From positions 2,232,001 through 2,296,000 of the forward strand of contig OZ281494.1 of assembly GCA_965637545.1 (NCBI GenBank): a stretch of 64,000 nucleotides of DNA, given 5' to 3'. Positions 13,198 through 60,780 of the stretch are shown here, piece after piece. Position numbers and translations under genes: made by a program. Position 1 is the stretch's first letter; each line of letters starts with the position of its first letter. The DNA is from Phallusia mammillata. Taxonomy: Eukaryota. The notes under the pieces were generated by a model. The model was not told the DNA's origin. It saw only the letters and a program-made list of their open reading frames with translations, and did not search any database.

Positions 13198-16100
13198 TTA
13201 CATAGTAACGAGTTCGGTATTCGTCCGGCGCACAGAAGCAACACCAGCTTTCTTACATTTCTCCAAAGCGCGGTCAATCACAGATGAATAAAGCAACGGG
13301 TTGAGGGCGCTGTTGATTGGAAGCAAAACCGCAGCTGCAAGCACATATACGATGTCCGACAAAACTACACCACCAAGCGACAAAAAACTAAGCATGCAAA
13401 TTGGAATCCAACAACAGAAATCGGTCAGAAGCAATCTAGATATTCGTTTTTGCATTTTGGCGCTCGTATCATTGCTTTTTGCCTCGGTCATGCGATTGCT
13501 GCGACGATAAATAAGAATATAAGCGACTACCATGAAAATAAACATGACAAAATCGACTGTGATGATAAACAGTGAGTATCCCCAAGCTGCATGGCTTTCT
13601 GAAGCAAAGAGCCTTGGCAAACACACGCTGGTTTTGGCGTAGTAACCAAACTCTCCCTTGATGGATTGCCCTGACATGTTAATGTCGATGACTTGTTTAG
13701 CGTCGTGCCATGATAACACGGTGCTGTTGGTGGGTGACATACGTTGTGCCAAAAGCATTGCAGCCTCAAAAGAAACAAAATCACGTTTGTGAACGAAATT
13801 GGGAAACCAGATTGTTGTTACAAAGTAACCAGATGCAAAATCAATTGTGGGAACGATGGCAATGACCAAAGCAACACACCAAGTAACGAAACACCCCAAT
13901 ATAATCCATTTAGGTCCCAGTGACATAGTAAAGAATGGGTTCCACACAGACACCAGTCGGTAGACTGATATCAGTGCCATGGTTAAAGCCGAAGTTTGAG
14001 ATGAAACAACACACAGTGCACCTAGGATTGAACATTGTGTGCTTGAACGCCATTCTGAATCAAAATAACAATAACTCCCGGAGAACTGGACACTTTTGAC
14101 TGCAACAGCAAGTAAATAGATTCCCATTAACATGTCGGAAACTGATAGGTTAACAATGAATATTTGAGTGCTTTTATTTACACGATTGTCGGTATTCCAG
14201 TTTAGATATGTCTTTTTTAGAGTGGTTGCCGCCACTATGAAATTCCCAATCAATGCAAGGATACCCATAAACCATATAAACGCGTTCAAAATCGGGTTGG
14301 CAATCATTTCCTTCTGATTGGAGAAGACAGTGTTACGAGAGCTGACATGTGGACATTCGTCACTGCCGTCTGAGCAGTCTTTGATTCCGTCTTCTTTGTC
14401 AGCAATGGGCACTGATAGCGGATTCCCAGTAAGACAATAAAACCTCGTGTCTTTACAACGATCCTTTGCCTCATCCGATTTATCGTCACAATCGTAGTTT
14501 CCATCGCAAACTTTCATGACGTCAATGCTCGACAAATCTCCATTTTTACAAATATAGCGTTTGGGACAAAGTGATTCGTTGTAGGAGTTGCCTGGAGTTC
14601 CATCACATGCCCAGTATTGTGCTGCATCTGACATAAATTTGGTGTCATTGCAGAATGTTGGTGGATATTGGCAATTATGGCACTCATCAGTAGCACTTAA
14701 ACATTCAGGTCTTCCATCGCATGCTACACCTAATGTATCCCTTTTGGCGCATATTATAGCATCAATTTGTGGATAACAATAGTTCGTGTTTAGCCAGTCC
14801 AAGCAGACCACAGATTGGTTGCACAGCACAGAATCTATCGGAAGGCAATCTGTTTGGTTGTAGCAGTGCATATGACCTGGTGGACAAGTTGACTGAGAAT
14901 CGCCAAGCACAGCTTTGCACACCGTCTGATTCTCGCATAAGCATTCATCTGACAGGTCGTAGCAATCAATCACGCCGTCGCACACCTGATTCTTTGAGAT
15001 AACGAGTCTCTTGTCCAGGCAAAGGAAGCATCGGAATTCTCCGTTGACGAAACACAGATCAGATTTGTCAGCGCACTGGGCGTCTTGATCGTAGAGATTG
15101 ATTTGTGGCAAGCTGCATGGAAATGTTAACCAATATCCAAGACATTTGAAACTCGGTTTCGCATGATTGTGGTAGCCACTTGGTGTTATAAATGGACAAA
15201 AAGAAACCAACGCGATTTGATAGTTATTGTTAAGGTCTTGATAAAAGACAGGTGATGATAAAGGAGGCCTGTCCTGTGGTCGGCATTGGGGACTGTTGCA
15301 AATCCAGTAATTATCAGTACATACTTTATCTTTGTGTCTTTCACACGGTCTGTGATGCTGAATACAACGTGAAGATTTGTTTACTTGGTACTTCAAATAT
15401 CTCTCCAACGATTTTTTACTGGTGCAGTTAACAAAAAACTGTGTGCAGCTTAAACCAAAAGTATTTATATAAAAATCGCAAGGTTCATCGGTTTGATCCA
15501 TGCAGTTCGGTGTACCATCGGCCACTGTTGTGTTAGGTATGCATTGCCCAGTAGTCGGACAGATCTGATCACCATAGATGCATCCGCACATTACTTGATC
15601 ACCACTGTATGTGCAATTGGTTTCGTCGCTGCTGTCATCGCAGTCAAACTTCCCGTTGCATTTTAAAGATAAAGAGATGCACTGTTTAGACTTGCACTCA
15701 AATTGATCTTCCCAGCAAGGACAGTTGGCTTCATCGCTGTAATCTTTGCAATCATCTACCCTGTCACATACGTTCGAGCTTGGCAGACACCCACGCACAC
15801 CAACACATGCAGAAATCTCGTAACATGCGCATTGAAACTCATTAACTGGGCAAGTGCAATTAATTTCGTCTGTTCCGTCCAAACAGTTGTAGATGCCATC
15901 ACATATTTGTGTCTTTTCATAACATCCCAACCCATCCGTGCAATTACTGTCTCTTGGAAAACAACCGCATTGGTATTGGTTTGCATTGCAAGTCGCAGTT
16001 ACATTATTGTCTTCGCATCTCCCGACTGGCGCACACTGAGTTGCATTAAATGTAGTTGAAATGTTGTCAGGTATTGTTGCTGGGCAACCACACACGAACT

Positions 16101-16481
16101 CTCCGTAGTAGCAAGTTTGCAACCAATGCCGACATTCCTCTGTAAAAACAGTTTGGCACTTAACAGTCATGGGGGTGCAAAAAACTTAAACCAGTTATTT
16201 TTTTTAAAGGGAGTCGTTAACTACACTTCTAATAAACGAACAAGTAAACCGTAGTGGTGTAAAATTGAACTGCAATAAACAAAATCATATTTCGTTTGGT
16301 AAAAATCTGTTACACCTGCTGTGTTGCGTTTTATGACCATACCGTATCATACTCACCGTCCTGTATTTCTTAAAAGTTTAACAGGAACAATCAAAATTTA
16401 CTTACCATAAGTGACAAGCCCGTCCGATGGAAAGTTGTTGATCAACAGAACAAAAGATAACAATAGCACAATCCTTACCAT
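13198..16481 (-). CDS. LDLa-repeat class A GPCR without LRRs, type A (1005 aa, 2 exons)
   Basis: Exon 1 16406-16481 (MVRIVLLLSFVLLINNFPSDGLVTY, donor gtaagt). Exon 2 13198-16139 (acceptor ttttacag, phase 1). About 8-11 canonical or degenerate LDLa modules (e.g. CWEDQFECKSKQC...CNGKFDCDDSSDETNC). RXFP/GRL101-like 7TM (NLSVSDMLMGIYL, TDFCCWIP, LPINSALNPLLY). Confidence 0.93.
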
Positions 16482-18836
16482 ATTTAACCTGCTAAATTAT
16501 TCATTAATCTAAACAAAAAAGAAGGCACATATTGTCTGCTCAAGCTACCTATCGATTCACACCGTTTACAAAACCTTTTACACTGTTTTGGGGATAATTG
16601 CAAAGTATCGCTGTTGATGGTGAACAATAACTAAAGTTCTCAGTTAATTAACAATTTTGTTACTTTTTACCTTGTGTGATTGCTATTTACAACAAAAGAA
16701 AAACAACATGAATAGATTGATACGGTAACAAACTTTAGACTTTTTTTATTTTATGTTATTCAACAAAAACTTCACTCTAGCTCTAAAATGTTAACGTTGT
16801 ACAAACTGCCGCAATCGCGAGTCACAAAAATATACTAAACCATCTAATGCTTGACATAAGCGGAGGGAAGTCGTTGATCAAACGTCATTGCCCTCACATC
16901 AATCAAGCTTTACTGGTTTCAAATTATTCAGGCATAACCTGGGGAGAATACTTTAACTAATCTGCAACGCATAGCAAGTAAGGTTACTTATATGATTAAA
17001 TAATGCCCACAAAATAATTTTTATCGAAAATACAGAATAGCGTAATTCGCGTTTAATTTTTTCTCGGGTTCATAAGTGCTCATAACTGTTCACAAATAAG
17101 TTATACTTCCAACTGTCTTGTCTGACGTTTTCCGAAACGCTAGTTTTGTCCAGATCTAAAATAATTAAATCAGCATTCAAATTGTGCTGTCCCAGATTAA
17201 AAACCGCATTTGCAATTACAATTATTTTTGACTACTGTTAGTTTTCTACTGATTTAAAGATGACACCTTAAACAAGCTTCCACAAATAGGACACCTAAAT
17301 TATATTAGTCTAAATTTCCTTTCTACATCACAGCAACCGCAGTTGGCTCAAAATGACAGATTAGACGATTTCCTGCCCCATATGGGTGCTAAGTGCGGAA
17401 GGGATATTACACTCTTCCTGCCCTATCTTTTTGACCAGTTGATTTGCTCCCATTGGTTAAGTGAAACTTGTTTATACGAGACCACCATTGGGCAACCAAT
17501 TGACAATTAATGATAATAATTCACCCTTACATTATATTGTTTTTGTGTAACTGAATTGTTTGCCGATACGTCAGGCGTCCAAAACAAATCTTTTGTTATC
17601 CTGCACAACTGAGTGACCAGACAAATCATCGTTGTTTTTGTTTGTTGCGAAGGTGTCAAGGTAAGGCTTTTCTGCCACAACCAAGACAAATCCGTACAAA
17701 GGTTAACATCAGCGCACCTTGTGAGTGACACTGCAATGCAAAGTGCTTTTAAACCATTTATTTCAAGAAGCGTTTGACACATAAGAGGAAGCCATTACAC
17801 ATGCCTTTACATCAACAGCTGATCAGCAATGATAAATCATCATCGGTGAGAAAGTCGGGTTTAGGTGGTGTATTAAGATAATATGACTTCCTATTTAAGT
17901 AGTGTGTATGGCTGCAATCTTAAAAAGGAATCCTGAATGTTTTTTTATACTAAGAGTGTTTGAACTGAACAGTATCTGATCTTTCAACAGGCAGCATGGT
18001 CATCGACGATCACCGTTTATTTACAAGTTTTACAAATTTAAAAATTGTTTTCTACGTGTTTATCCGTTGATACTGATATGCCTAAAACTGTTCACGGAAT
18101 TTTTAGACATGAACAACTGCCACCATAAAGGGCCAGTGACCGGCTAAAACGTAAAGTATACTTATTTGTGACAAACCCATTCTTATATAACCAACAACAG
18201 TGTCGACTTTCTACTTTTCTAAACTAACAAATTATCGTAGAAGGTAATTTGCAAATCGTAATTGTGTTCAGGGTTATGAACCTAATCAATAACATGCCAA
18301 ACACCTTCTGCATTATATAGCTTTTTTATACAACAAAAGCACAGCTGTGTACAACAGCTTCCAGTACGTCATATAATTCACACCGCTCTTGCTCAATCTG
18401 CGTCAAGTTCATCGTGACCAAACCATCAACCACTTTACCGACCAAACCGTTGGGAATTTCCCTTCGCTGGTTGGAATTGTTTCTCAAGGTTATGGCCAAA
18501 TTACTCGGGTTGGAACATTTTGGCACATAGTCTCTACTGCATGGTGTCTTCATATCGAGGACTAAACGCCGTAAGTTTGCTTAAGAACTATGACATATCA
18601 ACATACGCGAGTAAATTTACATCTGAATTCTTTGGAAATCTCAACGTATCAACGTCTACCTAATCAGGTACAAGAGCGCGAATCGCGTTTCAGCAAACTT
18701 AGGGTTTTTCTTTACATTTCAGGCCAAGTTTGGAATGTTCCTTTACATTTTTAAATCCCACTGAGCAGACAACAGCTCGTTGCGCACATTCTTTTTCTTT
18801 ATTTTAACCCATGACCCCGCGGGGCAGGCAACGGAT

Positions 18837-19084
18837 CAGTGGTTCCCAACCAGGGCCCATGGCCCCCCAGGGGGTCCACGAGCTATGTTCCGGGGGGCCA
18901 CGGGTGTAGATTTACAAGAAACACCCACTAAAAGTCATTTTCACTTATTCCCGAATTTATTCGACTATTTCACACACTATTTGTTGATAGTGAGGTTATC
19001 ACGCTCATTACTCTATTAGACCTGTTTAAGGCCAAAATTAATACTTTAAGGGGGCCATCGTCCACGAAAGGTTGGGAACCACTG
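18837..19084. mobile_element. hAT (Charlie-like) MITE (family 2)
   Basis: TIRs CAGTGGTTCCCAACC / GGTTGGGAACCACTG. TSD CAACGGAT/CAACAGAT (7/8). Empty site ggCAACAGATacttg in type-B spacers (e.g. ~25262). Confidence 0.9.
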
Positions 19085-19683
19085 CAACAGATCATTGCAA
19101 AGCGTTGAGTCTAACTCATGGAAAAATATCACGTTCTATTAGTGTTCAACAATTTGGGATCAAATAGTTTTAATTAGTGATTCAACAGTGTCGAGCCGAT
19201 GCTAAACCCATTCAATTTTCCTTTGTGTATTTTAAAATGAATTTTCCTTTAAAATACTTGCGTTTCCGGTAACAAACTGAATTACAACCATATCACTTGC
19301 TGCAAAAGCACACATCAAAAGGCAATAAGGCAAACAGTAGGCTAAGATAGTCAGTTACTCTGAGTTTAAATTGCTAAGACTGGTTTTAAATTTATATGTT
19401 TGTTTCCTGGCAAACCCTTTATTAGTAATATTCTTTTAGAAACCTAAAAAAGTAGGTTTTGTTGTTCCTTGGCAAACTTTTGTTTTGATTATCCAAGGTA
19501 TGTATTGATTTTGAACAAATCAAACCTGTACAAAAATGTAGCAAGAACATCAGTTTCAAGCACATCACCTAAAAGCAAAAAGAAAAACGTTTACACAAAA
19601 AGAATTAAGGGCAAAATAGAAAGGGTGTATTCAATATATCGGTAACCTTTTGACACTAGTACGACACAAGAAATTCACGATGG

Positions 19684-22600
19684 TCACATAACAACGAGTT
19701 CGGCAGAAGGCACGCGACATTTCTTACATTTGGCTAGTGCGCTGTCAATCACAGACGAATAAAGCAACGGGTTGAGGGCGCTGTTGATTGGAAGCAAAAC
19801 CGCAGCTGCAAGCACATAAACGATATCTGACATTATTACACCAGCAAGTGACAAAGAACTGAGGATGCAAATCGGAATCCAGCAACAGAAATCCGTCAGA
19901 AGCAATCTGGATATACGCTTTTGCATTTTGGCGCTCGTATCATTGTTTCTTGCCGCAGCCATGCGATTGCTGCGTCGATAGATAAGGACATAAGCGGCAA
20001 CCATGAAAATAAACAAGACAAAATCGACTGTGATAATAAACAGTGAATATTCCCAAGCTGCATGGCCACTTGAAGCAAAAAGTCTTGGCAAACACACGCT
20101 TGTTTTGGCGTAGTAACCAAACTCTCCTTTGATTGATTGGCCAGACATGTTACTGGCGATGACTCGTTTAGCTTCATGCCATGATAGCACGGTGCTGTTA
20201 GTGAGTGACATGCGTTGTGCCAAACTCATTGCAGCTTCAAAAGAAACAAAATCACGTTTGTGAACGAAATTGGGAAACCAGATTGTTGTTACAAAGTAAC
20301 CAGATACAAAATCAATTGTGGGAATGATGGCAATGACCATAGCAACACACCAAGTAACGAAACACGCCAAAATAATCCACTTAGGCCCAAGTGACATAGT
20401 GAGAAATGGTTTGTAGACAGATACAAGTCGATAAGCAGATATCAATGTCATGGTTAAAGCCGAAGTCTGAGATGAAATGACACACAGTGCGCCTAGGATT
20501 GAGCATTGTGTGCATGATCGCCATTGAGAATCAAAATAACAATAACTCCCAGAGAATTGGACACTTTTGACAGCCACAGCAAGTAAATAGATTCCCATTA
20601 ACATGTCGGAAACTGATAGGTTGACAATGAATATTTGAGTGCATTCATTTACACAACTGTCGGTATTCCAGTTTAGATATGTCTTTTTAACTGTGGTTGC
20701 AGCCACTATGAAATTCCCAATCAATGCAAGTATGCCCATGATCCATATAAACGCGTTCAAAATAGGGTTGGCGATCATTTCCTTCTGATTGGAGAAGACA
20801 GTGTCACGAGAACTGACAGGTGGACATTCGTCACTGCCATCCGAGCAGTCTTTGATTCCGTCTTCTTTGTCACGAATTGGCACTGAGATTGGATTCCCAT
20901 TAAGACAATAAAATCTCCTGTCCTTACAACGAATCTTTGCCTCATCCGATTTATCATCACAGTCGTAGTTTCCATCGCAAACTTTCATGACGTCAATACT
21001 CAACAAATCTCCACTGTTACAAATATAGCGTTTGGGACAAATTGATTCGTTATAGGAACTGTCTGATGTTCCATCGCACGTCCAGAGCTTTGCGGCAACT
21101 GACATAAATGCGGTATCGTTACAGAAAGCTGGTTGGTTGAGGCAGTTATGGCACTCATCAGTAGCACTTAAACATTCAGGTCTTCCGTCGCATGCTACAC
21201 CTAATGTTTTTCTCTCGGCACATATTATAGTGTCAATTTGTGGATAGCAATAGTTCGTGTTGAGATAGTTCAGGCAGACCACAGATTGGTTGCACAACAC
21301 AGAATCTATTGGATGGCAATCTGTTTGGTTGTAGCAGTGCATATGACCTGGTGGACAAGTTGACTGGGAATCGCCAAGCACAGCTTTGCACACCGTCTGA
21401 TTCTCGCACAAGCATTCATCTGACAGGTCGTAGCAGTCAATCACGCCATCGCACACCTGATTCCTTGAGATAACCAGTCGCCTGTCCAAGCAAAGGAAGC
21501 ATCGAAATTCTCCGTTGACGAAACAGAGATCGGATTTGTCAGCGCACTGGGCATCTTGGTCGTAAATATTTATTTGTGGCAAGCTACATGGCAATGTTAA
21601 CCAATAACCAAGACATTTGAAACTGGGGTATGCGTGAATGCTATCACCTGGTGTTATAAATGGACAAAAAGCACCCAAAGCAAATTGAATGATGTTGTTA
21701 AAATCCTGATATAAGACAGGAAATTGAGATGTGGGAACGTTGTCCGGTTGGCATCGAGGAATATTGCAAATCCAGTAATCATCAATACAAACTTGATCTT
21801 TGTGTCCTTCACACGGTCTGTGATGCTGAATGCAATGTAAAGAATTGGTGGGTTGGTACCTCACAAATCTCTCCATCGATTTTTTATTGGTGCAGTTTAA
21901 CAAGGTGTGCTCGCATTTTAAACTATACGAACGTGCATAGTAGTCACAAGGTTCATCGCTTTGATCAATGCATTGCGGTACACCATCTCCAACTGATGTG
22001 TTAGTTATACATTGCCCAGTTGGTGGGCAAATCTGTTCTTCATAGATGCATCCGCACATAACTTGATCACCGCTACACGTGCAATTGGTTTCGTCGCTGC
22101 CGTCTTTGCAGTCAAAATTTCCGTTGCACTTCAAAGATAATGGGATGCATTGTTTGGACTTGCACTCAAATTGATCTTCCCAGCAAGGACAGTTGACTTC
22201 ATCGCTGTAATCTTCACAATCATCAATCCTATCACATACCTCCGAGCTTGGCAGACAGCCACGCAAACCAACACATGAGGAACTTTCGTAACATACGCAT
22301 TGAAACTTATCAACTGGGCAAGTACAATTTACTTCGTCTGTTCCATCTAAACAGTCGTAGATGCCATCACATATTTGTGTCTTTTCATAACAACCTATCC
22401 CTTTCGTGCAATTACTGTCTCTTGGAAAACAGCCGCATTGGTATTGGTTTGCATTGCACTCCGCAGTCAAATTGTAGTCTTCGCATCCGCCAACTGGCGC
22501 ACATTGAGTCGCATTAAATGTAGTGGCCGTGTTGTTCGGTCTTGTTGCTGGGCAACCACACACAAACTCTCCCTTGTTGCACGTTTGCAGCGAATATCGA

Positions 22601-22935
22601 CATTCTTCTGTAAAAAAGCTGTCGCATTTAATATTTTTAGAACCACTGTATTTTTTGAGGGAATCGTTATCTACCCTTATAATAAGCGAACAAGTAAATT
22701 ACAGTGCTGTAAAATTAAACTGCGTTTAAAATAATAATATTTTGCCTGGTTAAGTTGTATTCTCATGTTTTATGACTATGGTTGTTTACTCTATACTATT
22801 CACAACACTGTTTATTTTATTTTAGCATGTTAATCCAGGAAGAAACACGATTTGCTTACCAAAAGTGACAAGCCCGTACGATGGTAAGCTGTTGATCAAC
22901 AGAACGAAAGATAACAAAAGCACTCTCCTAACCAT
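19684..22935 (-). CDS. LDLa-repeat GPCR without LRRs, type B (999 aa, 2 exons)
   Basis: Exon 1 22860-22935 (MVRRVLLLSFVLLINSLPSYGLVTF, donor gtaagc) and exon 2 19684-22607, total 3000 nt. Same architecture as type A. Confidence 0.93.
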
Positions 22936-25749
22936 ATTTACCCTGCTATATTATTTATTAATCTAAACTCAAAAGAAGACACGTATTGGCGACACAAGCA
23001 ACGTATCAATCCGACGATAACAAAACGTTTTCAAAATTGTAAGCTATACTGTTTTTGAAAACAATTAAATCACTATTTGTTGTGTACAATAACTAAGCTG
23101 TTCATTTTTTGACCACCTTGTTACGTTTTTACTTCTGTCAGAATTTCACATAAAACAATTATTTCATTCAAGCCCTAAGATGTTACCCTCCTTTACAAAC
23201 TGACCCGATCGTGAGCCACAACAATCTACTAAACGATCTAATGCTTGGCATGAGCAGGGGGAAGTCGCTGACCGTACGTTATTGCCCACACATCAATCAA
23301 GAGTTACTCGATTCAGATTATCCAGGCGAAACCCGGAAGAATGCTTTATCCAATTTGCAACACATAGCAAGTAAAGTTGTTTATTTGATAAAATACTGTC
23401 AACGAATTGATTTTTGTCGAAAAGCTCAGCCGATAGGAGCGTTTAATCTTTTCTCGGGTTCATGGGTGCTCAGTTTGGTCCAGATCACGTAAAGTATTTA
23501 AGTTGTGCTGTTTCAAATTGAAAACCTTTATTCTATCTTTCACAAATATGTCACTTTGGTGCAAATCCCTTCACATTTCATAGCAACCACGGTTTTTGCT
23601 CATAATAACAAATTTGACGACTTCCTGTCCAATACGAGTGAAAAGTGCAGATGGGATATCACAAGCTTCCTGCCTATACCCTTGTTGTACCCTTTTGACC
23701 AGATTTGGCCGCATTGGTTAAGTAAAACTTGTTTATATGAGACCACCATTGATCAACCAAGTGACAAATAATGAGAATAGTTCATCCTTCTGATATCGTA
23801 TTTTTTTCTGTTACTGAACAGTTTGCCGATACAATAGGTGTCCAAAACAAATCTCTTTTTGTGAATCTCTTTTACTATCTTGCACAAATGAGTGACCACA
23901 TAAATTATCGCTGTTTGAAATCGGCAACACAAGAAAATGCGTTAAATTGTTTGCTACAACCAAGACGAATCTGTACAAAGGTGAACAGCAGCAGACCTTG
24001 CAAGTGATACTGCCATGAAAAGTCCTTTTTAACTATTGATTTCAAGTATCGTTCAAAATATAAGAGAAAGCCGTAGACATGTATCCGGTCTTCACATCAA
24101 CAACTGATCGGCAATGATTATAATCATCTGTAAGCGAAGCCGGGTTTAGTACTTGCGGTTAAACTGGTGTATTAAGATTATATGACTTCCTTTTAAGAAG
24201 AGTATATGGCTGCATCAGTAATAGTTTAATATGCTTCCATTTAGTGACTGTGCTCCGGCCAAATCTCTTTTTGTCTACGTTTCAAATTTGGCACCAAAAC
24301 GGGTCATGTTTCAACGTCGCTAAAGAACTCAGGCGCAACGTGTTGCAACTATTTGTTGCCGGGCTAGCGGGGTTCGAGCTTGTAACAAAACAGATAAACT
24401 AGCCTTGAAGTGTAATAAAAAATAAAAAAATTCCGGCAACTTAACTTCCTACATTTAAAACTGAATGAAGCAAAACTTTCCGCAATTCTGATAGCATTAC
24501 AAATTGAAAATTATTTTTTACGTGTTTAAGCATCATAATTATCAGTTGCAAGAACTAAACTGTACTTGGAATTTTTGGACATGAACAACCGCGGCAATAA
24601 AGGACCAGTTATCTTGCTGAAACGTAAACTTTCCTTCTTTGTGACAGATCCACTCTCATATAACCAACAACAGTGTCAACTTTCTATCTTTTTAAACTGA
24701 CAAACTGTCGTAGAAGATGATTAGGAAATAAAATACTTTTGGTACTGATTGGTAGCGGTAACATGCCAAATACCTGCGTTACTATGGCTTATTAGTAATA
24801 AGCCTTATTAGTAATAAGTAATAAGTAATAGGTTATTACACAACGAAAGCAAAGCCATTAAAAACAGCTTCAAGTAAGGTTATATCGCGACCCGAAAACT
24901 AGATCAAATTCCGGGACTGTCAAACCAATTCGATAACATTCGTCTCGCTCCTGCATCTACAACATAAATGATATTTGTAGTTCTTGGGGAGTCTAGAATT
25001 TGGCAAAAGGTTTGCTAGCTGGAATTGTTTCTAAAGGTTTACTCGGGTTTGAATAATTAAAAAAAAGTATTTTTGGACATAGTCTCTACTGGGCGGTGCC
25101 TTTATTTTAAGGACTAAATGCCGTAAGTTTGCTTAAGAAATATGACACACGAATATACACGAGATCAAATCCCACCCAACAAGAAACAGAATGTCGCAGA
25201 GCATTTTTGCATTCCATAGCTATTTACCTGTTTTGCTTTTGCCCATGAACGCGCGAGGAAGGCAACAGATACTTGTAAAGCGTTGAGTCTGACTGATAGC
25301 GACATGGAATCACTACCTTTTCTTAAAGCAACATTTGAAACGTGGAGAAAAAGTTGTGGGATACGCCCAAATGTTGCATGCAAACATGGTATAAGCCACC
25401 ACTTAGTTTGAAACTTTCAAGTTTCAAATTTAATTCTGCAATTTTGTTGTAGTGATTTATAGGAAAACAAGCAAGTTCTATTCGTATTCAAAAACTGGGA
25501 TTAAATATTTTAATTAATTATGCAACAGTTTCGAGCAGATGCTAAACCCATTCAATATTCCTTTGTTTGTTTTAAACTGTACTTTCCTTCAAAATACACC
25601 ACTCCACGGTAATAAATTGAACTACAAACTTTCCACTTGTTTCAACGACAACGATTAAATATAAATTATAAAGTTTAAATTCTAAGACTGGTTTCAAATT
25701 TCAATATTTGTTTGCTGTCAAACTATTTGTTAGTAACCGTCTTGTAGAA

Positions 25750-26447: not shown

Positions 26448-26681
26448 TTGTAGAACATCCAAAAAGTAGGCTGTGTTGTTTTTCAGCACAAATATTTCGT
26501 GGTGATATTTCCAGATATGTATTGATTTTGAACAAACCAAACTTGTACAAATGTGTAGCAAGAACATCAGTTACAAGCGCATAGGGAAACAGAAAGGAAC
26601 TTGGTTGGTTTGGAACAAAATCGAAAAGGTATATTTCAAATATTGGTAACATTTGACATAATAAGAGAAAATCACAAAGAG

Positions 26682-51040: not shown

Positions 51041-54000
51041 TTACATAGTAACGAGTTCGGTATTCGTCCGGCGCACAGAAGCAACACCAGCTTTCTTACA
51101 TTTCTCCAAAGCGCGGTCAATCACAGATGAATAAAGCAACGGGTTGAGGGCGCTGTTGATCGGAAGCAAAACCGCAGCTGCAAGCACATATACGATGTCC
51201 GACAAAACTACACCACCAAGCGACAAAAAACTAAGCATGCAAATTGGAATCCAACAACAGAAATCGGTCAGAAGCAATCTAGATATTCGTTTTTGCATTT
51301 TGGCGCTCGTATCATTGCTTTTTGCCTCGGTCATGCGATTGCTGCGACGATAAATAAGAATATAAGCGACTACCATGAAAATAAACATGACAAAATCTAA
51401 TGTGATGATAAACAGTGAGTATCCCCAAGCTGCATGGCTTTCTGAAGCAAAGAGCCTTGGCAAACACACGCTGGTTTTGGCGTAGTAACCAAAGTCTCGC
51501 TTGATGGATCGCCCTGACATGTTAATGTCGATGACTTGTTTAGCTTCATGCCATGATAGCACTGTGCTGTTGGTGGGTGACATTTGTTGTGCCAAAAGCA
51601 TTGCAGCTTCAAAAGAAACAAAATCACGTTTGTGAACGAAATTAGGAAACCAGATTGTTGTTACAAAGTAACCAGATGCAAAATCAATTGTGGGAACGAT
51701 GGCAATGACCAAAGCAACACACCAAGTGAAGAAACACCCCAATAAAATCCATTTAGGTCCCAGTGACATAGTAAAAATGGGTTCCACACAGACACCAGTC
51801 GGTAGACTGATATCAGTGCCATGGTTAAAGCCGAAGTCTGAGATGAAATGACACACAGTGCACCTAGGATCGAGCATTGTGTGCTTGAACGCCATTCTGA
51901 ATCAAAATAACAATAACTCCCAGAGAACTGGGCACTTTTGGCTGCAACAGCAAGTAAATAGATTCCCATTAACATGTCGGAAACTGATAGGTTAACAATG
52001 AATATTTGATTGCTTTTATTTACACGATTGTCGGTATTCCAGTTTAGATATGTCTTTTTTAGAGTGGTTGCCGCCACTATAAAATTCCCAATCAATCCAA
52101 GGATACCCATAAACCATATAAACGCGTTCAAAATAGGGTTGGCGATCATTTCCTTCTGATTGGAGAAGACAGTGTTACGAGAGCTGACATGTGGACATTC
52201 GTCACTGCCGTCTGAGCAGTCTTTGATTCCGTCTTCCTTGTCAGCAATGGGCACTGATAGCGGATTCCCAGTAAGACAATAAAACCTCGTGTCCTTAAAA
52301 CGATCCTTTGCCTCATCCGATTTATCGTCACAATCGTAGTTTCCATCGCAAACTTTCATGACGTCAATGCTCGACAAATCTCCATTTTTACAAATATAGC
52401 GTTTGGGACAAAGTGATTCGTTGTAGGAGTTGCCTGGAGTTCCATCACATGCCCAGTATTGTGCTGCATCTGACATAAATTGGGTGTCATTGCAGAATGT
52501 TGGTGGATATTGGCAATTATGGCACTCATCAGTAGCACTTAAACATTCAGGTCTTCCATCGCATGCTACACCTAATGTATCCCTCTTGGCGCATATTATA
52601 GCATCAATTTGTGGATAACAATAGTTCGTGTTTAGCCAGTCCAAGCAGACCACAGATTGGTTGCACAGCACATAATCTATCGGAAGGCAATCTGTTTGGT
52701 TGTAGCAGTGCATAAGACCTGGTGGACAAGTTGACTGGGAATCGCCAAGCACAGCTTTGCACACCGTCTGATTCTCGCATAAGCATTCATCTGACAGGTC
52801 GTAGCAATCAATCACGCCATCGCACACCTGATTCCTTGAGATAACGAGTCTCTTGTCCAGGCAAAGGAAGCATCGGAATTCTCCGTTGACGAAACACAGA
52901 TCAGATTTGTCAGTGCACTGGGCGTCTTGATCGTAGAGATTGATTTGTGGCAAGCTGCATGGAAATGTTAACCAATATCCAAGACATTTGAAACTCGGTT
53001 TCGCATGATTGTGGTAGCCACTTGGTGTTATAAATGGACAAAAAGAAACCAAAGCGATTTGATAGTTATTGTTAAGGTTTTGATAAAAGACAGGTGATGA
53101 TAAAGGAGGCCTGTCCTGTGGTCGGCATTGGGGACTGTTGCAAATCCAGTAATTATCAGTACACACTTTATCTTTGTGTCTTTCACACGGTCTGTGATGC
53201 TGAATACAACGTGAAGATTTGTTTACTTGGTACTTCAAATATCTCTCCAACGATTTTTTACTGGTGCAGTTAACAAAAAACTGTGTGCAGCTTAAACCAA
53301 AAGTCTTTATATAATAGTCGCAAGGTTCATCGGTTTGATCAATGCAGTTCGGTGTACCATCGGCCACTGTTGTGTTAGGTATGCATTGCCCAGTAGTCGG
53401 ACAGATCTGATCACCATAGATGCATCCGCACATTACTTGATCACCACTGCATGTGCAATTGGTTTCGTCGCTGCTGTCATCGCAGTCAAACTTCCCGTTG
53501 CATTTTAAAGATAATGAGATGCACTGTTTAGACTTGCACTCAAATTGATCTTCCCAGCAAGGACAGTTGGCTTCATCGCTGTAATCTTTGCAATCATCTA
53601 CCCTGTCACATACGTTCGAACTTGGAAGACAGCCACGCAAACCAACACATGCGGAAATCTCGTAACATACGCATTGAAACTCATTAACTGGGCAAGTGCA
53701 ATTAATTTCGTCTGTTCCGTCTAAACAGTCGTAGATGCCATCACATATTTGTGTCTTTTCATAACATCCCAGCCCATACGTGCAATTACGGTCTCTTGGA
53801 AAACAACCGCATTGGTATTGGTTTGCATTGCAAGTCGCAGTTACATTATTGTCTTCGCATCTCCCGACTGGCGCACATTGAGTCGCATCAAATGTAGTTG
53901 AAATGTTGTCAGGTCTTGTTGCTGGGCAACCACACACGAACTCTCCGTAGTAGCAAGTTTGCAACCAATGCCGACATTCCTCTGTAAAAACAGTTTTGGC

Positions 54001-54326
54001 ACTTAACAGTCATGGGGGTGCAAAAAACTTAAACTAGTTTTTTTTTTTCAAAGGGAGTCGTCAACTACACTTTCTTTTAAACGAACAAGTAAACCGTAGT
54101 GGTGTAAAATTGAACTGCAATAAACAAAATCATATTTCGTTTGGTAAAAATCTGTTACACCAGCTGTGTTGCGTTTTATGACCATACCGTATCATACTCA
54201 CCGTCCTGTATTTCTTAAAAGTTTAACAGGAACAATCAAAATTTACTTACCATAAGTGACAAGCCCGTACGATGGAAAGTTGTTGATCAACAGAACAAAA
54301 GATAACAATAGCACAATCCTTACCAT
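51041..54326 (-). pseudogene. LDLa-repeat GPCR type A', single-base frameshift between TM3 and TM4 (pseudogene or sequence error)
   Basis: Exon 1 54251-54326; exon 2 51041-53981 is 2941 nt versus 2942 in type A. gtaaa-aatggg at ~51775 versus gtaaagaatggg at ~13930 splits the ORF into 767-aa and 284-aa pieces. Confidence 0.75.
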
Positions 54327-56681
54327 ATTTAACCTGCTAAATTATTCATTAATCTAAACAAAAAAGAAGGCACATATTGTCTGCTCAAGCTACCTATCGA
54401 TTCACACCGTTTACAAAACCTTTTACACTGTTTTGGGGATAATTGCAAAGTATCGCTGTTGATGGTGAACAATAACTAAAGTTCTCAGTTATTTAACAAT
54501 TTTGTTACTTTTTACCTTGTGTGATTGCTATTTACAACAAACGAAAAACAACATGAATAGATTGATACGGTAACAAACTTTAGACTTTTTTTTATTTTAT
54601 GTTATTCAACAAAAGCTTCACTCTAGCTCTAAAATGTTAACGTTGTACAAACTGCCGCAATCGCGAGTCACAAAAATATACTAAACCATCTAATGCTTGA
54701 CATAAGCGAAGGGAAGTCGTTGATCAAACGTCATTGCCCTCACATCAATCAAGCTTTACTAGTTTCAAATTATTCAGGCATAACCTGGGGAGAATACTTT
54801 AACTAATCTGCAACGCATAGCAAGTAAGGTTACTTATATGATTAAATAATGCCCACAAAATAATTTTTATCGAAAATACAGAATAGCGTAATTCGCGTTT
54901 AATTTTTTCTCGGGTTCATAAGTGCTCATAACTGTTCACAAATAAGTTATACTTCCAACTGTCTTGTCTGACGTTTTCCGAAACGCTAGTTTTGTCCAGA
55001 TCTAAAATAATTAAATCAGCATTCAAATTGTGCTGTCCCAGATTAAAAACCGCATTTGCAATTACAATTATTTTTGACTACTGTTAGTTTTCTACTGATT
55101 TAAAGATGACACCTTAAACAAGCTTCCACATTTAGGACACCTAAATTATATTAGTCTAAATTTCCTTTCTACATCACAACAACCGCAGTTGGCTCAAAAT
55201 GACAGATTAGACGATTTCCTGCCCCATATGGGTGCTAAGTGCGGAAGGGATATTACACTCTTCCTGCCCTATCTTTTTGACCAGTTGATTTGCTCCCATT
55301 GGTTAAGTGAAACTTGTTTATACGAGACCACCATTGGGCAACCAATTGACAATTAATGATAATAATTCACCCTTACATTATATTGTTTTTGTGTAACTGA
55401 ATAGTTTGCCGATACGTCAGGCGTCCAAAATAAATCTTTTGTTATCCTGCACAACTGAGTGACCAGACAAATCATCGTTGTTTTTGTTTGTTGCGAAGGT
55501 GTCAAGGTAAGGCTTTTCTGCCACAACCAAGACAAATCCGTACAAAGGTTAACATCAGCGCACCTTGTGAGTGACACTGCAATGCAAAGTGCTTTTAAAC
55601 CATTTATTTCAAGAAGCGTTTGACACATAAGAGGAAGCCATTACACATGCCTTTACATCAACAGCTGATCAGCAATGATAAATCATCATCGGTGAGAAAG
55701 TCGGGTTTAGGTGGTGTATTAAGATAATATGACTTCCTATTTAAGTAGTGTGTATGGCTGCAATCTTAAAAAGGAATCCTGAATGTTTTTTATACTAAGA
55801 GTGTTTGAACTGAACAGTATCTGATCTTTCAACAGGCAGCATGGTCATCGACGATCACCGTTTATTTACAAGTTTTACAAATTTAAAAATTGTTTTCTAC
55901 GTGTTTATCCGTTGATACTGATATGCCTAAAACTGTTCACGGATTTTTTAGACATGAACAACTGCCACCATAAAGGGCCAGTGACCGGCTAAAACGTAAA
56001 GTATACTTATTTGTGACAAACCCATTCTTATATAACCAACAACAGTGTCGACTTTCTACTTTTCTAAACTAACAAATTATCGTAGAAGGTAATTTGCAAA
56101 TCGTAATTGTGTTCAGGGTTATGAACCTAATCAATAACATGCCAAACACCTTCTGCATTATATAGCTTTTTTATACAACAAAAGCACAGCTGTGTACAAC
56201 AGCTTCCAGTACGTCATATAATTCACACCGCTCTTGCTCAATCTGCGTCAAGTTCATCGTGACCAAACCATCAACCACTTTACCGACCAAACCGTTGGGA
56301 ATTTCCCTTCGCTGGTTGGAATTGTTTCTCAAGGTTATGGCCAAATTACTCGGGTTGGAACATTTTGACACATAGTCTCTACTGCATGGTGTCTTCATAT
56401 CGAGGACTAAACGCCGTAAGTTTGCTTAAGAACTATGACATATCAACATACGCGAGTAAATTTACATCTGAATTCTTTGGAAATCTCAACGTATCAACGT
56501 CTACCTATTCAGGTACAAGAGCGCGAATCGCGTTTCAGCAAACTTAGGGTTTTTCTTTACATTTCAGGCCAAGTTTGGAATGTTCCTTTACATTTTTAAA
56601 TCCCACTGAGCAGACAACAGCTCGTTGCGCACATTCTTTTTCTTTATTTTAACCCATGACCCCGCGGGGCAGGCAACGGAT

Positions 56682-56928
56682 CAGTGGTTCCCAACCAGGG
56701 CCCATGGCCCCCCAGGGGGTCCACGAGCTATGTTCCGGGGGGCCACGGGTGTAGATTTACAAGAAACACCCACTAAAAGTCATTTTCACTTATTCCCGAA
56801 TTTATTCGACTATTTCACACACTATTTGTTGATAGTGAGGTTATCACGTCATTACTCTATTAGACCTGTTTAAGGCCAAAATTAATACTTTAAGGGGGCC
56901 ATCGTCCACGAAAGGTTGGGAACCACTG
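56682..56928. mobile_element. hAT MITE family 2, duplicated copy
   Basis: Same TIRs and TSD as 18837-19084. Confidence 0.9.
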
Positions 56929-57528
56929 CAACAGATCATTGCAAAGCGTTGAGTCTAACTCATGGAAAAATATCACGTTCTATTAGTGTTCAACAATTTG
57001 GGATCAAATAGTTTTAATTAGTGATTCAACAGTGTCGAGCCGATGCTAAACCCATTCATTTTTCCTTTGTGTGTTTTTAAAATGAATTTTCCTTTAAAAT
57101 ACTTGCGTTTCCGGTAACAAACTGAACTACAACCATATTACTTGCTGCAAAAGCACACATCAAAAGGCAATAAGGCAAACAGTAGGCTAAGATAGTCAGT
57201 TACTCTGAGTTTAAATTGCTAAGACTGGTTTTAAATTTATATGTTTGTTTCCTGGCAAACCCTTTATTAGTAATATTCTTTTAGAAACCTAAAAAAGTAG
57301 GTTTTGTTGTTCCTTGGCAAACTTTTGTTTTGATTATCCAAGGTATGTATTGATTTTGAACAAATCAAACCTGTACAAAAATGTAGCAAGAACATCAGTT
57401 TCAAGCACATCACCTAAAAGCAAAAAGAAAAACGTTTACACAAAAAGAATTAAGGGCAAAATAGAAAGGGTATATTCAATATATCGGTAACCTTTTGACA
57501 CTAGTACGACACAAGAAATTCACGATGG

Positions 57529-60500
57529 TCACATAATAACGAGTTCGGCAGAAGGCACGCGACATTTCTTACATTTGGCTAGTGCGCTGTCAATCACAGA
57601 CGAATAAAGCAACGGGTTGAGGGCGCTGTTGATTGGAAGCAAAACCGCAGCTGCAAGCACATAAACGATATCTGACATTATTACACCAGCAAGTGACAAA
57701 GAACTGAGGATGCAAATCGGAATCCAGCAACAGAAATCCGTCAGAAGCAATCTGGATATACGCTTTTGCATTTTGGCGCTCGTATCATTGTTTCTTGCCG
57801 CAGCCATGCGATTGCTGCGTCGATAGATAAGGACATAAGCGGCAACCATGAAAATAAACAAGACAAAATCGACTGTGATAATAAACAGTGAATATTCCCA
57901 AGCTGCATGGCCACTTGAAGCAAAAAGTCTTGGCAAACACACGCTGGTTTTGGCGTAGTAACCAAACTCTCCTTTGATTGATTGGCCAGACATGTTACTG
58001 GCGATGACTCGTTTAGCTTCATGCCATGATAGCACGGTGCTGTTAGTGGGTGACATGCGTTGTGCCAAACTCATTGCAGCTTCAAAAGAAACAAAATCAC
58101 GTTTGTGAACGAAATTAGGAAACCAGATTTTTGTTACAAAGTAACCAGATACAAAATCAATTGTGGGAATGATGGCAATGACCATAGCAACACACCAAGT
58201 AACGAAACACGCCAAAATAATCCACTTAGGCCCAAGTGACATAGTGAGAAATGGTTTGTAGACAGATACAAGTCGATAAGCAGATATCAATGTCATGGTT
58301 AAAGCCGAAGTCTGAGATGAAATGACGCACAGTGCGCCTAGGATTGAGCATTGTGTGCTTGAACGCCATTCTGAATCAAAATAACAATAACTCCCAGAGA
58401 ACTGGACACTTTTGACTGCAACAGCAAGTAAATATATTCCCATTAACATGTCGGAAACTGATAGGTTGACAATGAATATTTGAGTGCATTTATTTACACA
58501 ACTGTCGGTATTCCAGTTTAGATATGTCTTTTTAACTGTGGTTGCAGCCACTATGAAATTCCCAATCAATGCAAGTATGCCCATGATCCATATAAACGCG
58601 TTCAAAATAGGGTTGGCGATCATTTCCTTCTGATTGGAGAAGACAGTGTCACGAGAACTGACAGGTGGACATTCGTCACTGCCATCCGAGCAGTCTTTGA
58701 TTCCGTCTTCCTTGTCACGAATTGGCACTGAGATTGGATTACCACTTAGACAATAAAATCTCCTGTCCTTACAACGAATCTTTGCCTCATCCGATTTATC
58801 ATCACAGTCGTAGTTTCCATCGCAAACTTTCATGACGTCAATACTCAACAAATCTCCATTGTTACAAATATAGCGTTTGGGACAAATTGATTCGTTATAG
58901 GATCTGTCTGATGTTCCATCGCACGTCCAGAGCTTTGCGGCAACTGACATAAATGCGGTATCGTTACAGAAAGCTGGTTGGTTGAGGCAGTTATGGCACT
59001 CATCAGTAGCACTTAAACATTCAGGTCTTCCGTCGCATGCTACACCTAATGTTTTTCTCTCGGCACATATTATAGTGTCAATTTGTGGATAGCAATAGTT
59101 CGTGTTGAGATAGTTCAAGCAGACCACAGATTGGTTGCACAACACAGAATCTATTGGATGGCAATCTGTTTGGTTGTAGCAGTGCATATGACCTGGTGGA
59201 CAAGTTGACTGGGAATCGCCAAGCACAGCTTTGCACACCGTCTGATTCTCGCACAAGCATTCATCTGACAGGTCGTAGCAGTCAATCACGCCATCGCACA
59301 CCTGATTCCTTGAGATAACCAGTCGCCTGTCCAAGCAAAGGAAGCATCGAAATTCTCCGTTGACGAAACAGAGATCGGATTTGTCAGCGCACTGGGCATC
59401 TTGGTCGTAAATATTTATTTGTGGCAAGCTACATGGCAATGTTAACCAATACCCAAGACATTTGAAACTGGGGTATGCGTGAATGCTATCACCTGGTGTT
59501 ATAAATGGACAAAAAGCACCCAAAGCAAATTGAATGATGTTGTTATAATCCTGATATAAGACAGGAAATTGAGATGTGGGAACGTTGTCCGGTTGGCATC
59601 GAGGAATGTTGCAAATCCAGTAGTCATCAATACAAACTTGATCTTTGTGTCCTTCACACGGTCGGTGATGCTGAATGCAATGTAAAGAATTGTTGGGTTG
59701 GTATCTCACAAATCTCTCCATCGATTTTTTATTGGTGCAGTTTAACAAGGTGTGCTCGCATTTTAAACTATACGAACGTGCATAGTAGTCACAAGGTTCA
59801 TCGCTTTGATCAATGCATTGCGGTACACCATCTCCAACTGATGTGTTAGTTATACATTGCCCAGTTGGTGGGCAAATCTGTTCTTCATAGATGCATCCGC
59901 ACATAACTTGATCACCGCTACACGTGCAATTGGTTTCGTCGCTGCCGTCTTTGCAGTCAAAATTTCCGTTGCACTTCAAAGATAATGGGATGCATTGTTT
60001 GGACTTGCACTCAAATTGATCTTCCCAGCAAGGACAGTTGACTTCATCGCTGTAATCTTTACAATCATCAATCCTATCACATACCTCCGAGCTTGGCAGA
60101 CAGCCACGGAAACCAACACATGAGGAACTTTCGTAACATGCACATTGAAACTTATCAACTGGGCAAGTACAATTTACTTCGTCTGTTCCATCTAAACAGT
60201 CGAAGATGCCATCACATATTTGTGTCTTTTCATAACAACCTATCCCTTTCGTGCAATTACTGTCTCTTGGAAAACAGCCGCATTGGTATTGGTTTGCATT
60301 GCACTCCGCAGTCAAATTGTAGTCTTCGCATCCGCCAACTGGCGCACACTGAGTCGCATTAAATGTAGTTGCCGTGTTGTTCGGTCTTGTTGCTGGGCAA
60401 CCACACACAAACTCTCCCTTGTTGCACGTTTGCAGCGAATATCGACATTCTTCTGTAAAAAAGCTGTCGCATTTAATATTTTTAGAACCACTGTATTTTT

Positions 60501-60780
60501 TGAGGGAATCGTTATCTACCCTTATAATAAGCGAACAAGTAAATTACAGTGCTGTAAAATTAAACTGCGTTTAAAATAATAATATTTTGCCTGGTTAAGT
60601 TGTATTCTCATGTTTTATGACTATGGTTGTTTACTCTATACTATTCACAACACTGTTTATTTTATTTTAGCATGTTAATCCAGGAAGAAACACGATTTGC
60701 TTACCAAAAGTGACAAGCCCGTACGATGGTAAGCTGTTGATCAACAGAACGAAAGATAACAAAAGCACTCTCCTAACCAT
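57529..60780 (-). CDS. LDLa-repeat GPCR without LRRs, type B' (999 aa, 2 exons)
   Basis: Exon 1 60705-60780 and exon 2 57529-60452. Near-identical to 19684-22935 apart from scattered substitutions and a type-A tract. Confidence 0.93.

What the first reader, a model, noticed from the sequence alone, without database searches (positions are those of the whole stretch)
13198..60780. Expanding tandem array of LRR-less LDLa-GPCRs: candidate diversified recognition-receptor system
Seen: six full-length loci plus one fragment in three types, with about 660 aa of Cys-rich ectodomain fused directly to the 7TM, and recent birth (duplication) and death (deletion, frameshift). Established: RXFP1/2 have one LDLa plus LRRs and snail GRL101 has many LDLa plus LRRs; LRR-less LDLa-GPCRs have been noted as orphan receptors in ascidian genomes, and I know of no ligand for them. 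Inference: birth-and-death dynamics with localised ectodomain variation resembles immune, allorecognition or chemosensory receptor clusters more than a hormone receptor.
Basis: partly seen in the sequence, partly recalled or inferred. Interest (0 to 1): 0.85.

Follow-up and report, generated by a model that had tools for sequence, protein, structure and literature searches.

The report
Tandem LDLa-repeat GPCR genes, ascidian-type
The window holds a cluster of six near-identical genes for an orphan sea-squirt receptor family already described in Ciona (many LDL-receptor-type repeats joined to a relaxin-receptor-like seven-helix core, no leucine-rich repeats); the cluster is evolving by duplication, gene conversion and gene loss, but an immune or self-recognition role is not shown, and two of the six copies may be alternative haplotypes rather than extra genes.

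Summary
Observation confirmed. On the minus strand, 13198-60780, lie six two-exon genes in three types: A1/A2, B1/B3 and C1/C2. Each has a 76-nt signal-peptide exon, a 252-269 nt intron and a ~2.94 kb exon. The proteins are 999-1005 aa, with 8-9 LDLa modules, no LRR and an LGR/RXFP-type 7TM. A2 has a 1-nt deletion. A 7TM fragment lies outside the range at 1443-2335 (+).

This is the LDLRR-GPCR family named in Ciona in 2008 (PMC2396169): orphan, lineage-specifically expanded, with ESTs mostly from blood cells. So it is a new member of a known kind.

What this analysis adds:
- The six copies form one tight clade, and other tunicates have their own clades.
- B and C share a 96-100% identical 5' half.
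- C2 carries a B-type conversion tract.
- A2 evolves without constraint (5 S : 16 N changes, against 18 S : 8 N in A1).
- Nonsynonymous change peaks at codons 221-340, but pN/pS is never clearly above 1.

Caveat: contigs from three other individuals show only one A-block version per individual, at single-copy depth. The 98.6% A-B block duplication may therefore be polymorphic or an assembly of two haplotypes. No RNA run holds the genes. The recognition-receptor idea remains speculation. The scan's first-stage notes record other LDLa-GPCR clusters elsewhere in this genome.

The parts
13198..16481 (-). Gene A1 (type A, intact, 1005 aa): exon 1 16406-16481, intron, exon 2 13198-16139
   Evidence: signal peptide and 7 TM segments; class-A switch residues
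19684..22935 (-). Gene B1 (type B, intact, 999 aa): exon 1 22860-22935, exon 2 19684-22607
26682..29953 (-). Gene C1 (type C, intact, 1005 aa): exon 1 29878-29953, exon 2 26682-29623
33667..36936 (-). Gene C2 (type C, intact, 1005 aa; the ORF list's 965-aa ORF): exon 1 36861-36936, exon 2 33667-36608
34312..34437 (-). Tract in C2 (codons 750-791, TM3 end to TM4) in which 17 codons differ from C1 and all equal type B: gene conversion between types
51041..54326 (-). Gene A2 (type A, broken): exon 1 54251-54326, exon 2 51041-53981; 1-nt deletion after 51775 (codon 761) truncates after TM3; also C587F in an LDLa module
   Evidence: A2 branch 5 S: 16 N against A1 branch 18 S: 8 N, Fisher p=0.003
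57529..60780 (-). Gene B3 (type B, intact, 999 aa): exon 1 60705-60780, exon 2 57529-60452
1443..2335 (+). Inverted pseudogene fragment (TM3 end to C-terminus, several frameshifts), 75-80% protein identity to A1; outside the finding's range
12919..26173 (.). Block 1 of the 13.3-kb duplicate (A1, B1 and spacers), 98.6% identical to 50760-64000
   Evidence: differences listed
50760..64000 (.). Block 2 of the duplicate (A2, B3 and spacers); runs to the window's end, where 63011-64000 resembles the spacer that precedes a C-type gene. Contigs of three individuals end or start exactly at 50759|50760.
23420..37395 (.). 7.0-kb tandem duplication: 23420-30412 (spacer plus C1) matches 30408-37395 (spacer plus C2) at 97.4-99%
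15196..15555 (-). Most variable coding stretch (A1 codons 221-340): pN 0.17-0.28, pN/pS 0.4-1.05. It holds a predicted small beta-beta-alpha-beta-beta module (residues 247-311) followed by a decayed LDLa module.
22032..23535 (-). 5' flank, exon 1, intron and codons 1 to about 218 of B1. This stretch is 96-100% identical to C1 (29048-30553) although the rest of the genes is 69-93% identical: a chimeric or converted 5' half.
41038..43053 (-). Unrelated adhesion-type GPCR gene (GPS motif plus 7tm_2 exons) lying between C2 and A2

Best explanation
What it is. A cluster of paralogous genes of the tunicate LDLRR-GPCR family, that is, LGR type-C-like receptors that lack the leucine-rich-repeat domain.

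Shown, protein architecture. Each intact gene encodes these parts in order:
- a signal peptide;
- four LDLa-type modules;
- a small variable module;
- a decayed LDLa module;
- four to five more LDLa modules;
- a short hinge similar to that of RXFP1;
- a rhodopsin-class 7TM that keeps N1.50, D2.50, the TM3-ECL2 cysteines, R3.50, W4.50, CWxP and NPxxY;
- an unusually long (about 85 aa) structured second extracellular loop that is conserved across the family.

Inferred, how it works. The receptor sits at the cell surface. It captures a protein or lipoprotein-like ligand through the calcium-dependent acidic pockets of its LDLa modules. It then passes the signal to a G protein through the membrane-proximal LDLa module, hinge and ECL2, as the LDLa module and ECL2 do in RXFP1. 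The ligand is unknown.

Shown, how the cluster evolves. It changes by tandem and segmental duplication, by unequal exchange or gene conversion between types, and by loss (one copy decaying, one dead fragment). This is the same birth-and-death pattern the family shows in other tunicates.

Shown, a caveat on copy number. The number of copies per haplotype is probably variable, or overstated in this assembly.
For: Domains: LDLa (8-9 stretches) plus 7tm_1, no LRR.

7TM affinity: by sequence the 7TM is closest to RXFP1 (7tmw, E 8e-24), then TSHR, LHCGR, FSHR and LGR4, and the match includes the hinge. The AlphaFold model of residues 541-1005 has pLDDT 89.6, and its 35 best PDB matches are all LGR-type receptors.

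Ectodomain: matches LRP2 and VLDLR LDLa arrays. Five modules keep the full CDGxxDCxDxSDE calcium signature.

Intact function: signal peptide, 7 TM segments and the switch residues are present. Purifying selection acts on the intact copies, with dN/dS 0.17-0.39.

Family: 322 homologs were found; those with a source name are from Ciona, Phallusia, Clavelina and Styela. Ciona's LDLRR-GPCRs are described in PMC2396169. The long ECL2 matches 116 of 120 homologs.

Evolution of the cluster: the six copies form one clade, and Ciona and Clavelina form their own clades. The B/C shared 5' half is.
Against: No ligand, no coupling data and no expression evidence exist for this species; none of the RNA-labelled runs of the organism holds the genes. 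The activation mechanism is by analogy with RXFP1 only. R3.50 sits in a YRL motif rather than E/DRY. Copy number is uncertain.
Confidence: 0.85

Rival explanations
1. Part of the apparent expansion is not fixed paralogy. The A2-B3 block (50760-64000) and the A1-B1 block (12919-26173) would be two haplotypes of one locus placed in series by the assembler, or a duplication that is polymorphic in the population. On this reading there are about four loci per haplotype, not six.
For: Single version at single-copy depth. In contigs of three independent individuals (X1, X3, X4), every site that tells A1 from A2 shows one version only. The depth there equals that of the unique flank: about 161-177 against 170-201 in X1, 39-46 against 44-49 in X3, and 8.5-9.4 against 10-11 in X4.

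Which version each sample carries. X1 carries the A1 version at all diagnostic sites listed, including 10 of 10 substitutions plus the indel in 54331-55700. X3 and X4 are mosaics of the two versions. A fourth sample (X10) shows only the A2 version of the spacer.

Other points. No listed contig bridges 50759|50760. Divergence of 1.4% is of the order reported for ascidian heterozygosity (my knowledge, not tested here).
Against: The window has no N. The two blocks have different left flanks. Contigs end or begin exactly at 50759|50760 in X1 and X3, and the right-hand contig begins at 50764 in X4. That fits a graph branch point, meaning that this sequence has more than one context in those individuals. 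The A2 branch is unconstrained while the A1 branch is constrained, as expected for a separate redundant copy. Logan contigs drop variants and their depths are rough; raw reads were not on hand.
Confidence: 0.4
2. The cluster is a diversified non-self, allorecognition or chemosensory receptor repertoire. The variable module would be a specificity determinant kept diverse by selection.
For: Species-specific expansions. Tandem array with gain and loss. Variation concentrated at codons 221-340 and 441-560, while flanking parts are homogenised by conversion. Individuals differ in haplotype content. Ciona ESTs of the family came mostly from blood cells (PMC2396169).
Against: dN/dS is below 1 in all regions; only one 40-codon window in one pair reaches 1.05, on 3.5 synonymous differences. 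Only three sequence types are available, so there is little power. The same stretch is poorly conserved family-wide, which fits low constraint. No expression data for this species. No known allorecognition or immune receptor of tunicates belongs to this family (my knowledge).
Confidence: 0.2
3. The receptors sense endogenous large ligands such as lipoprotein or vitellogenin-like particles, or insulin/relaxin-like peptides, as proposed for GRL101 and for the Ciona LDLRR-GPCRs. The paralogs would be partly redundant copies that differ in affinity or expression.
For: LDLa arrays with intact calcium-binding signatures, like those of LRP2 and VLDLR. RXFP1-like 7TM and hinge. Overall purifying selection. 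The hypothesis is stated in PMC2396169.
Against: No GPCR is known to be activated by a lipoprotein (stated in PMC2396169). In RXFP receptors the LRR domain contributes to relaxin binding (PMC2396169), and it is absent here. Species-specific turnover is unusual for receptors of conserved hormones.
Confidence: 0.25

Closest known systems
Ciona intestinalis LDLRR-GPCRs (Kamesh, Aradhyam and Manoj 2008, PMC2396169)
   Same: One to ten LDLa modules at the N-terminus, no LRR, and a 7TM similar to INSL3/relaxin receptors. Lineage-specific expansion and orphan status. In the 7TM tree a Ciona clade of nine lies next to the window clade and its five unnamed sisters. Protein identity is 36-41%.
   Different: Different species and a separate, recent expansion: paralogs here are about 80-82% identical to each other, or about 96% and more between the two copies of one type. 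The tandem arrangement, the conversion mosaic, the decaying copy and the between-individual differences are described here. I did not find them in that paper.
RXFP1/RXFP2 (type C1 LGRs)
   Same: Closest solved 7TM by sequence (7tmw, E 8e-24), with similarity reaching into the hinge (PHV...). An LDLa module is present. LGR-type fold.
   Different: RXFP1/2 have one LDLa and about ten LRRs, which contribute to relaxin binding. Here there are 8-9 LDLa modules and no LRR. ECL2 is about 55 aa longer. YRL replaces the EKY seen at that place in RXFP1.
Lymnaea GRL101 and type C2 LGRs
   Same: Many LDLa modules ahead of an LGR-type 7TM. Orphan status.
   Different: GRL101-type receptors also carry LRRs (PMC2396169, PMC4079206); none is found here.
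LDL-receptor family ectodomains (LRP2/megalin, VLDLR)
   Same: The ectodomain's best sequence matches (E 3e-56 and 3e-24), with the calcium-binding signature in five modules.
   Different: Those are single-pass endocytic receptors with EGF and beta-propeller parts. Here the array is fused to a GPCR.

Membership tests
Tunicate LDLRR-GPCR (PMC2396169) | N-terminal LDLa modules, single or in tandem (1-10) | tested here: met
   Pfam Ldl_recept_a, 8-9 stretches per protein; LRP2 and VLDLR matches
Tunicate LDLRR-GPCR (PMC2396169) | No leucine-rich repeats | tested here: met
   No LRR family at E<=10 in A1, B1 or C1
Tunicate LDLRR-GPCR (PMC2396169) | 7TM similar to relaxin/INSL3 receptors and related to the Ciona members | tested here: met
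   RXFP1 is the best PDB hit. LGR-type fold. Groups with the Ciona clade at SH-aLRT 95.
LGR type C1 (RXFP1/2) | LRR ectodomain between the LDLa module and the hinge | tested here: not met
   No LRR; the LDLa array runs to about 25 residues before TM1
LGR type C1 (RXFP1/2) | 7TM of the LGR clade | tested here: met
   No tree with RXFP sequences was built here; PMC2396169 reports 999/1000 bootstrap for the Ciona family with LGR/GLHR.
LGR type C2 (GRL101) | Multiple LDLa modules together with LRRs | tested here: not met
   Multiple LDLa: yes. LRR: none.
Rhodopsin-class GPCR able to signal | N1.50, D2.50, C3.25-ECL2 disulfide, R3.50, W4.50, CWxP, NPxxY | tested here: met
   Residues 658, 694, 728/865, 753, 779, 935-938 and 972-976 of A1. 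They are invariant or nearly so in 64 family members. E/D3.49 is replaced by Y.
Diversified recognition-receptor cluster (immune, allorecognition or chemosensory type) | Positive or diversifying selection on the ligand-binding part | tested here: inconclusive
   The regional maximum is dN/dS 0.39. The highest sliding window is 1.05, on few differences. Only three types are available.
Diversified recognition-receptor cluster (immune, allorecognition or chemosensory type) | Copy-number or haplotype polymorphism between individuals | tested here: inconclusive
   Individuals carry different A-block versions and seemingly one copy each, but contigs cannot separate alleles, copy-number variation and assembly error.
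Diversified recognition-receptor cluster (immune, allorecognition or chemosensory type) | Expression in haemocytes or sensory cells | not testable with these tools
   No RNA run holds the genes. The only evidence is the Ciona EST statement in PMC2396169.

The most novel reading that the evidence does not exclude
The cluster is part of a GPCR-based, germline-diversified recognition repertoire of tunicates. Haplotypes would differ in gene number and in mosaic alleles. A small fold-unassigned module (residues 247-311) and the neighbouring decayed LDLa module would set specificity. Haemocytes would express subsets of the genes to sense non-self or allogeneic ligands.
Probability: 0.1. Interest if true: 0.8.

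Novelty: new member of a known kind. Interest (0 to 1): 0.4.

Why it matters
[quoted passage not shown] In the papers I could search they are still without a ligand, eighteen years after they were first described.

This cluster gives three things. First, a clean set of very recent paralogs in which constrained and free parts of the ectodomain can be read directly. Second, a natural loss-of-function copy. Third, a locus where copy number seems to differ between individuals. These make it a practical place for population and deorphanisation studies.

It does not by itself show a new kind of system. It also warns that counts of 'recent duplicates' in this assembly need read-level checks.

Tried and rejected
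1. RNA evidence. Two run searches found no RNA holder, so the splice and expression could not be checked with reads.

2. Read depth. All runs were Logan contigs, not raw reads. therefore gives only contig-level depth, and the duplication question stays open.

3. 7TM tree with named RXFP, GRL101 and LGR sequences. No tool returned those sequences as usable ids. I used the PDB sequence ranking, the fold ranking and the published Ciona tree instead.

4. Fold of the variable module. The model has moderate confidence (mean pLDDT 66.5; 79-90 for residues 247-311). The best non-LDLa matches have Z of 4.2 or less, which is uninformative. Pfam finds nothing in the part scanned, residues 266-405.

5. 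Identity of the nearest homologs. The encoding contigs are metagenome assemblies without taxon names and hold one gene each.

6. Literature on haemocyte expression after 2008. Nothing found.

7. No hit, so that neighbour is unconfirmed.

8. Rejected: that the frameshift is only an assembly slip. X3 has depth without the restoring base, and A2 also carries an excess of nonsynonymous changes.
Full report
**1. What is there**

The window has no N. Its minus strand carries six long ORFs at 13198-16170, 19684-22563, 26682-29663, 33667-36564, 51041-53964 (in two overlapping frames) and 57529-60408. All score for Pfam Ldl_recept_a and 7tm_1.

Aligning the upstream regions showed a conserved 76-nt first exon. 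It begins ATGGT[AT]AGG and encodes M-V-R-[IR]-V-L-L-L-S-F-V-L-L-I-N... It ends at a GTAAG donor. An intron of 252-269 nt follows, and the acceptor TTTTTACAG|AG restores the frame in all six copies. That exon occurs exactly six times in the window, against 0 expected by chance.

The spliced products are 1005 aa (A1, C1, C2) or 999 aa (B1, B3).

A2 has lost one base after 51775 (codon 761). Its frame ends 38 codons later, after TM3.

The only other piece of the family is an inverted fragment with several frameshifts at 1443-2335, outside the stated range.

Between C2 and A2 lie about 12 kb with an adhesion-type GPCR gene (GPS and 7tm_2 exons, 41038-43053) and a sulfotransferase-like piece (46066-46296). 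The array is therefore interrupted.

**2. The protein**

- *Ectodomain.* After the signal peptide come about 74 cysteines and 13-14 N-glycosylation sequons. At a permissive threshold Pfam sees 8-9 LDLa stretches and no LRR family. Five modules keep the full CDGxxDCxDxSDE calcium signature. The ectodomain's best solved relatives are LRP2 and VLDLR.
- *Residues 247-386, the part with no Pfam match (residues 266-405 were scanned).* Alignment with homologs shows three parts: a poorly conserved stretch with a few fixed cysteines; a module that is a normal LDLa in other species but has lost its cysteines and acidic motif here; and a conserved atypical module, GFKC...LPQxNLYD...QCADxSDxC. AlphaFold gives a small beta-beta-alpha-beta-beta unit for residues 247-311 (pLDDT 79-90) and low confidence for 320-393. 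No solved fold matches the unit convincingly (Z 4.2 or less).
- *7TM by sequence.* The 7TM part is closest to RXFP1 (E 8e-24), then TSHR, LHCGR, FSHR and LGR4. The RXFP1 match starts in the hinge.
- *7TM by fold.* A model of residues 541-1005 has pLDDT 89.6 and pTM 0.85. Its 35 best PDB matches are all LGR-type receptors.
- *Switch residues.* N1.50, D2.50, the TM3-ECL2 cysteine pair, R3.50, W4.50, CWxP and NPxxY are present, and invariant or nearly so in 64 family members.
- *ECL2.* The second extracellular loop is about 85 aa long. It is predicted with two helices and short strands, and 116 of 120 homologs match it.

**3. The family**

A database search gave 322 homologs. The best is only 36-41% identical. 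Those that carry a source name are from Ciona intestinalis, Phallusia mammillata, Clavelina lepadiformis and Styela clava.

Kamesh et al. 2008 (PMC2396169) named these 'LDLRR-GPCRs' in Ciona. They reported 14 members with 1-10 LDLa modules, no LRR and relaxin-receptor-like TM regions. They described a lineage-specific expansion, found no ligand, and noted ESTs mostly from blood and haemocytes. I found no later paper on the family.

In a 7TM tree of 69 sequences the six window copies form one clade (support 100) on a long stem. That clade is sister to five unnamed metagenome proteins, and next comes a Ciona clade of nine. Clavelina has its own clade of 15. Each species has therefore expanded the family on its own.

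First-stage notes of this scan list further LDLa-GPCR clusters elsewhere in this genome, and one 14.5 kb before this window. I did not check them.

**4. How the cluster evolves**

*Duplicated blocks.* Self-comparison gives two recent duplications in the assembly:
- 12919-26173 matches 50760-64000 at 98.6% (A and B with spacers).
- 23420-30412 matches 30408-37395 at 97.4-99% (spacer plus C).

*Divergence.* Between types dS is 0.33-0.47. Within types it is 0.026-0.054.

*Mosaicism.*
- B and C are 96-100% identical from 600 nt upstream through exon 1, the intron and codons 1 to about 218. Identity then falls abruptly to 69-75% (dS 0.11-0.14 against 0.5-0.7).
- C2 differs from C1 mainly in codons 750-791, where all 17 differing codons equal type B.

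*Decay of A2.* With B and C as outgroup, the A1 branch has 18 synonymous and 8 nonsynonymous changes. The A2 branch has 5 and 16 (Fisher p=0.003), and these include the loss of an LDLa cysteine (C587F). A2 has therefore been free of constraint for some time, which fits its frameshift.

**5. Selection**

Nei-Gojobori dN/dS is 0.17-0.39 in every region and every pair.

In 40-codon windows, pN is highest at codons 221-340 (0.17-0.28). It is also high at 441-560 in comparisons with type C. It is close to zero at 361-440.

pN/pS reaches 0.65-1.05 at 221-300 and 0.6-0.76 at 441-500, on small counts.

The same stretch is also the least conserved in other species.

**6. Are all six copies real loci?**

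Only assembled contigs of public runs were on hand. I laid those of three individuals from three studies (X1, X3, X4), and of a run under another organism label (X10), on 49800-55700. I compared the reported differences with the list of A1/A2 differences.

*What each sample shows.*
- At every diagnostic site listed, each individual shows one version only.
- X1 has the A1 version throughout: the 3-nt gap at 50821, 50835/6, 53053-53317, 53994-54269, and exactly the 10 substitutions plus one gap that separate the two spacers in 54331-55700.
- X3 has the A2 version at 50760-50985 and 53305-53317, but the A1 version at 53053-53164 and in the spacer.
- X4 is another mosaic.
- X10 holds the A2 version of the spacer.

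*Depth.* The depth of these contigs equals that of the unique flank 50228-50759. The figures are X1 148-177 against 171-201, X3 29-46 against 44-49, and X4 8.5-9.4 against 10-11. Two fixed copies should give about 1.5 times the flank depth.

*The junction.* In X1 and X3 contigs end at 50759 and start at 50760; in X4 the right-hand contig starts at 50764. No listed contig bridges the junction. That is what a branch point in the assembly graph would give, so this sequence seems to have more than one context in those genomes.

*The frameshift.* All contigs of X1 and X4 that cover 51775 carry the extra base that keeps the frame. In X3, about 61 of 168 depth units lack it.

*My reading.* The A2-B3 block is either a duplication that is not fixed, or a second haplotype placed in series. 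The frameshift allele is real but not general. I put about 0.4 on 'not a fixed second locus'. Against that reading stand the different flanks, the absence of gaps and the unconstrained A2 branch.

*Other copies.* Summed depth over conserved coding parts is 10-25 times single copy. This suggests many more close relatives in the genome.

**7. Function**

Shown: the genes are intact, under purifying selection, and have all the parts of a secreted-pathway class-A receptor of the LGR clade.

Inferred: ligand capture is by LDLa pockets, and activation is through the last LDLa module, the hinge and ECL2, as in RXFP1. The ligand and the G protein are unknown.

No RNA-labelled run of the organism held 5% of the words of A1-B1. 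That is weak negative evidence only.

The recognition-receptor reading fits the turnover, the localised variation, the differences between individuals and the Ciona blood-cell ESTs. It has no direct support, and I give it about 0.2. The published lipoprotein or large-ligand idea gets about 0.25.

**8. Verdict**

The thing is a new set of members of a family known since 2008. The new details (gene model, conversion mosaic, decaying copy, long conserved ECL2, decayed LDLa module, copy-number doubt) are useful but not surprising for a tandem receptor family.

Noticed in passing
window 41038-43918 (-): A multi-exon adhesion-type GPCR gene (GPS motif at 42454-43053, 7tm_2 pieces at 41929-42180 and 41038-41568) sits inside the LDLa-GPCR cluster, between C2 and A2.
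   Followed up: partly
window 46066-46296 (-): An ORF that matches the C-terminal end of Pfam Sulfotransfer_4 (E 3e-9), probably the last exon of a sulfotransferase-like gene.
   Followed up: partly
window 49800-50230: A high-copy repeat. Summed contig depth is 26,000-55,000 in X1 against about 170 for single-copy sequence, and many contigs end at about 49865, 49900, 50077 and 50229-50236.
   Followed up: no
window 1443-2874 (+): The inverted 7TM fragment has a type-A C-terminal tail (…EKCKKAGVASVRRTNTELVTM), although its DNA is closer to types B and C. Its homology to A1 continues past the A1/A2 duplication boundary, to 12664.
   Followed up: partly
window 5943-6377 and 7418-7696 (-): ORFs in the region where first-stage notes place a C-type lectin gene gave no Pfam hit as single ORFs. 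The domain may be split over exons.
   Followed up: partly
window 50537-50759: X1, X3 and X4 all differ from the window at the same four sites (50583, 50680, 50701, 50708). The assembled haplotype therefore carries the rarer allele here.
   Followed up: no
A1 residues 795-880 (window about 13573-13833, -): ECL2 is about 85 aa, predicted with two helices and short strands at high confidence, and conserved in 116 of 120 family members. It is about 55 aa longer than in RXFP1.
   Followed up: partly
L001 and L002 (metagenome contigs that carry P0002 and P0036): The homologs are also encoded by one long uninterrupted ORF. L002 has a reverse-transcriptase ORF 9 kb downstream.
   Followed up: no
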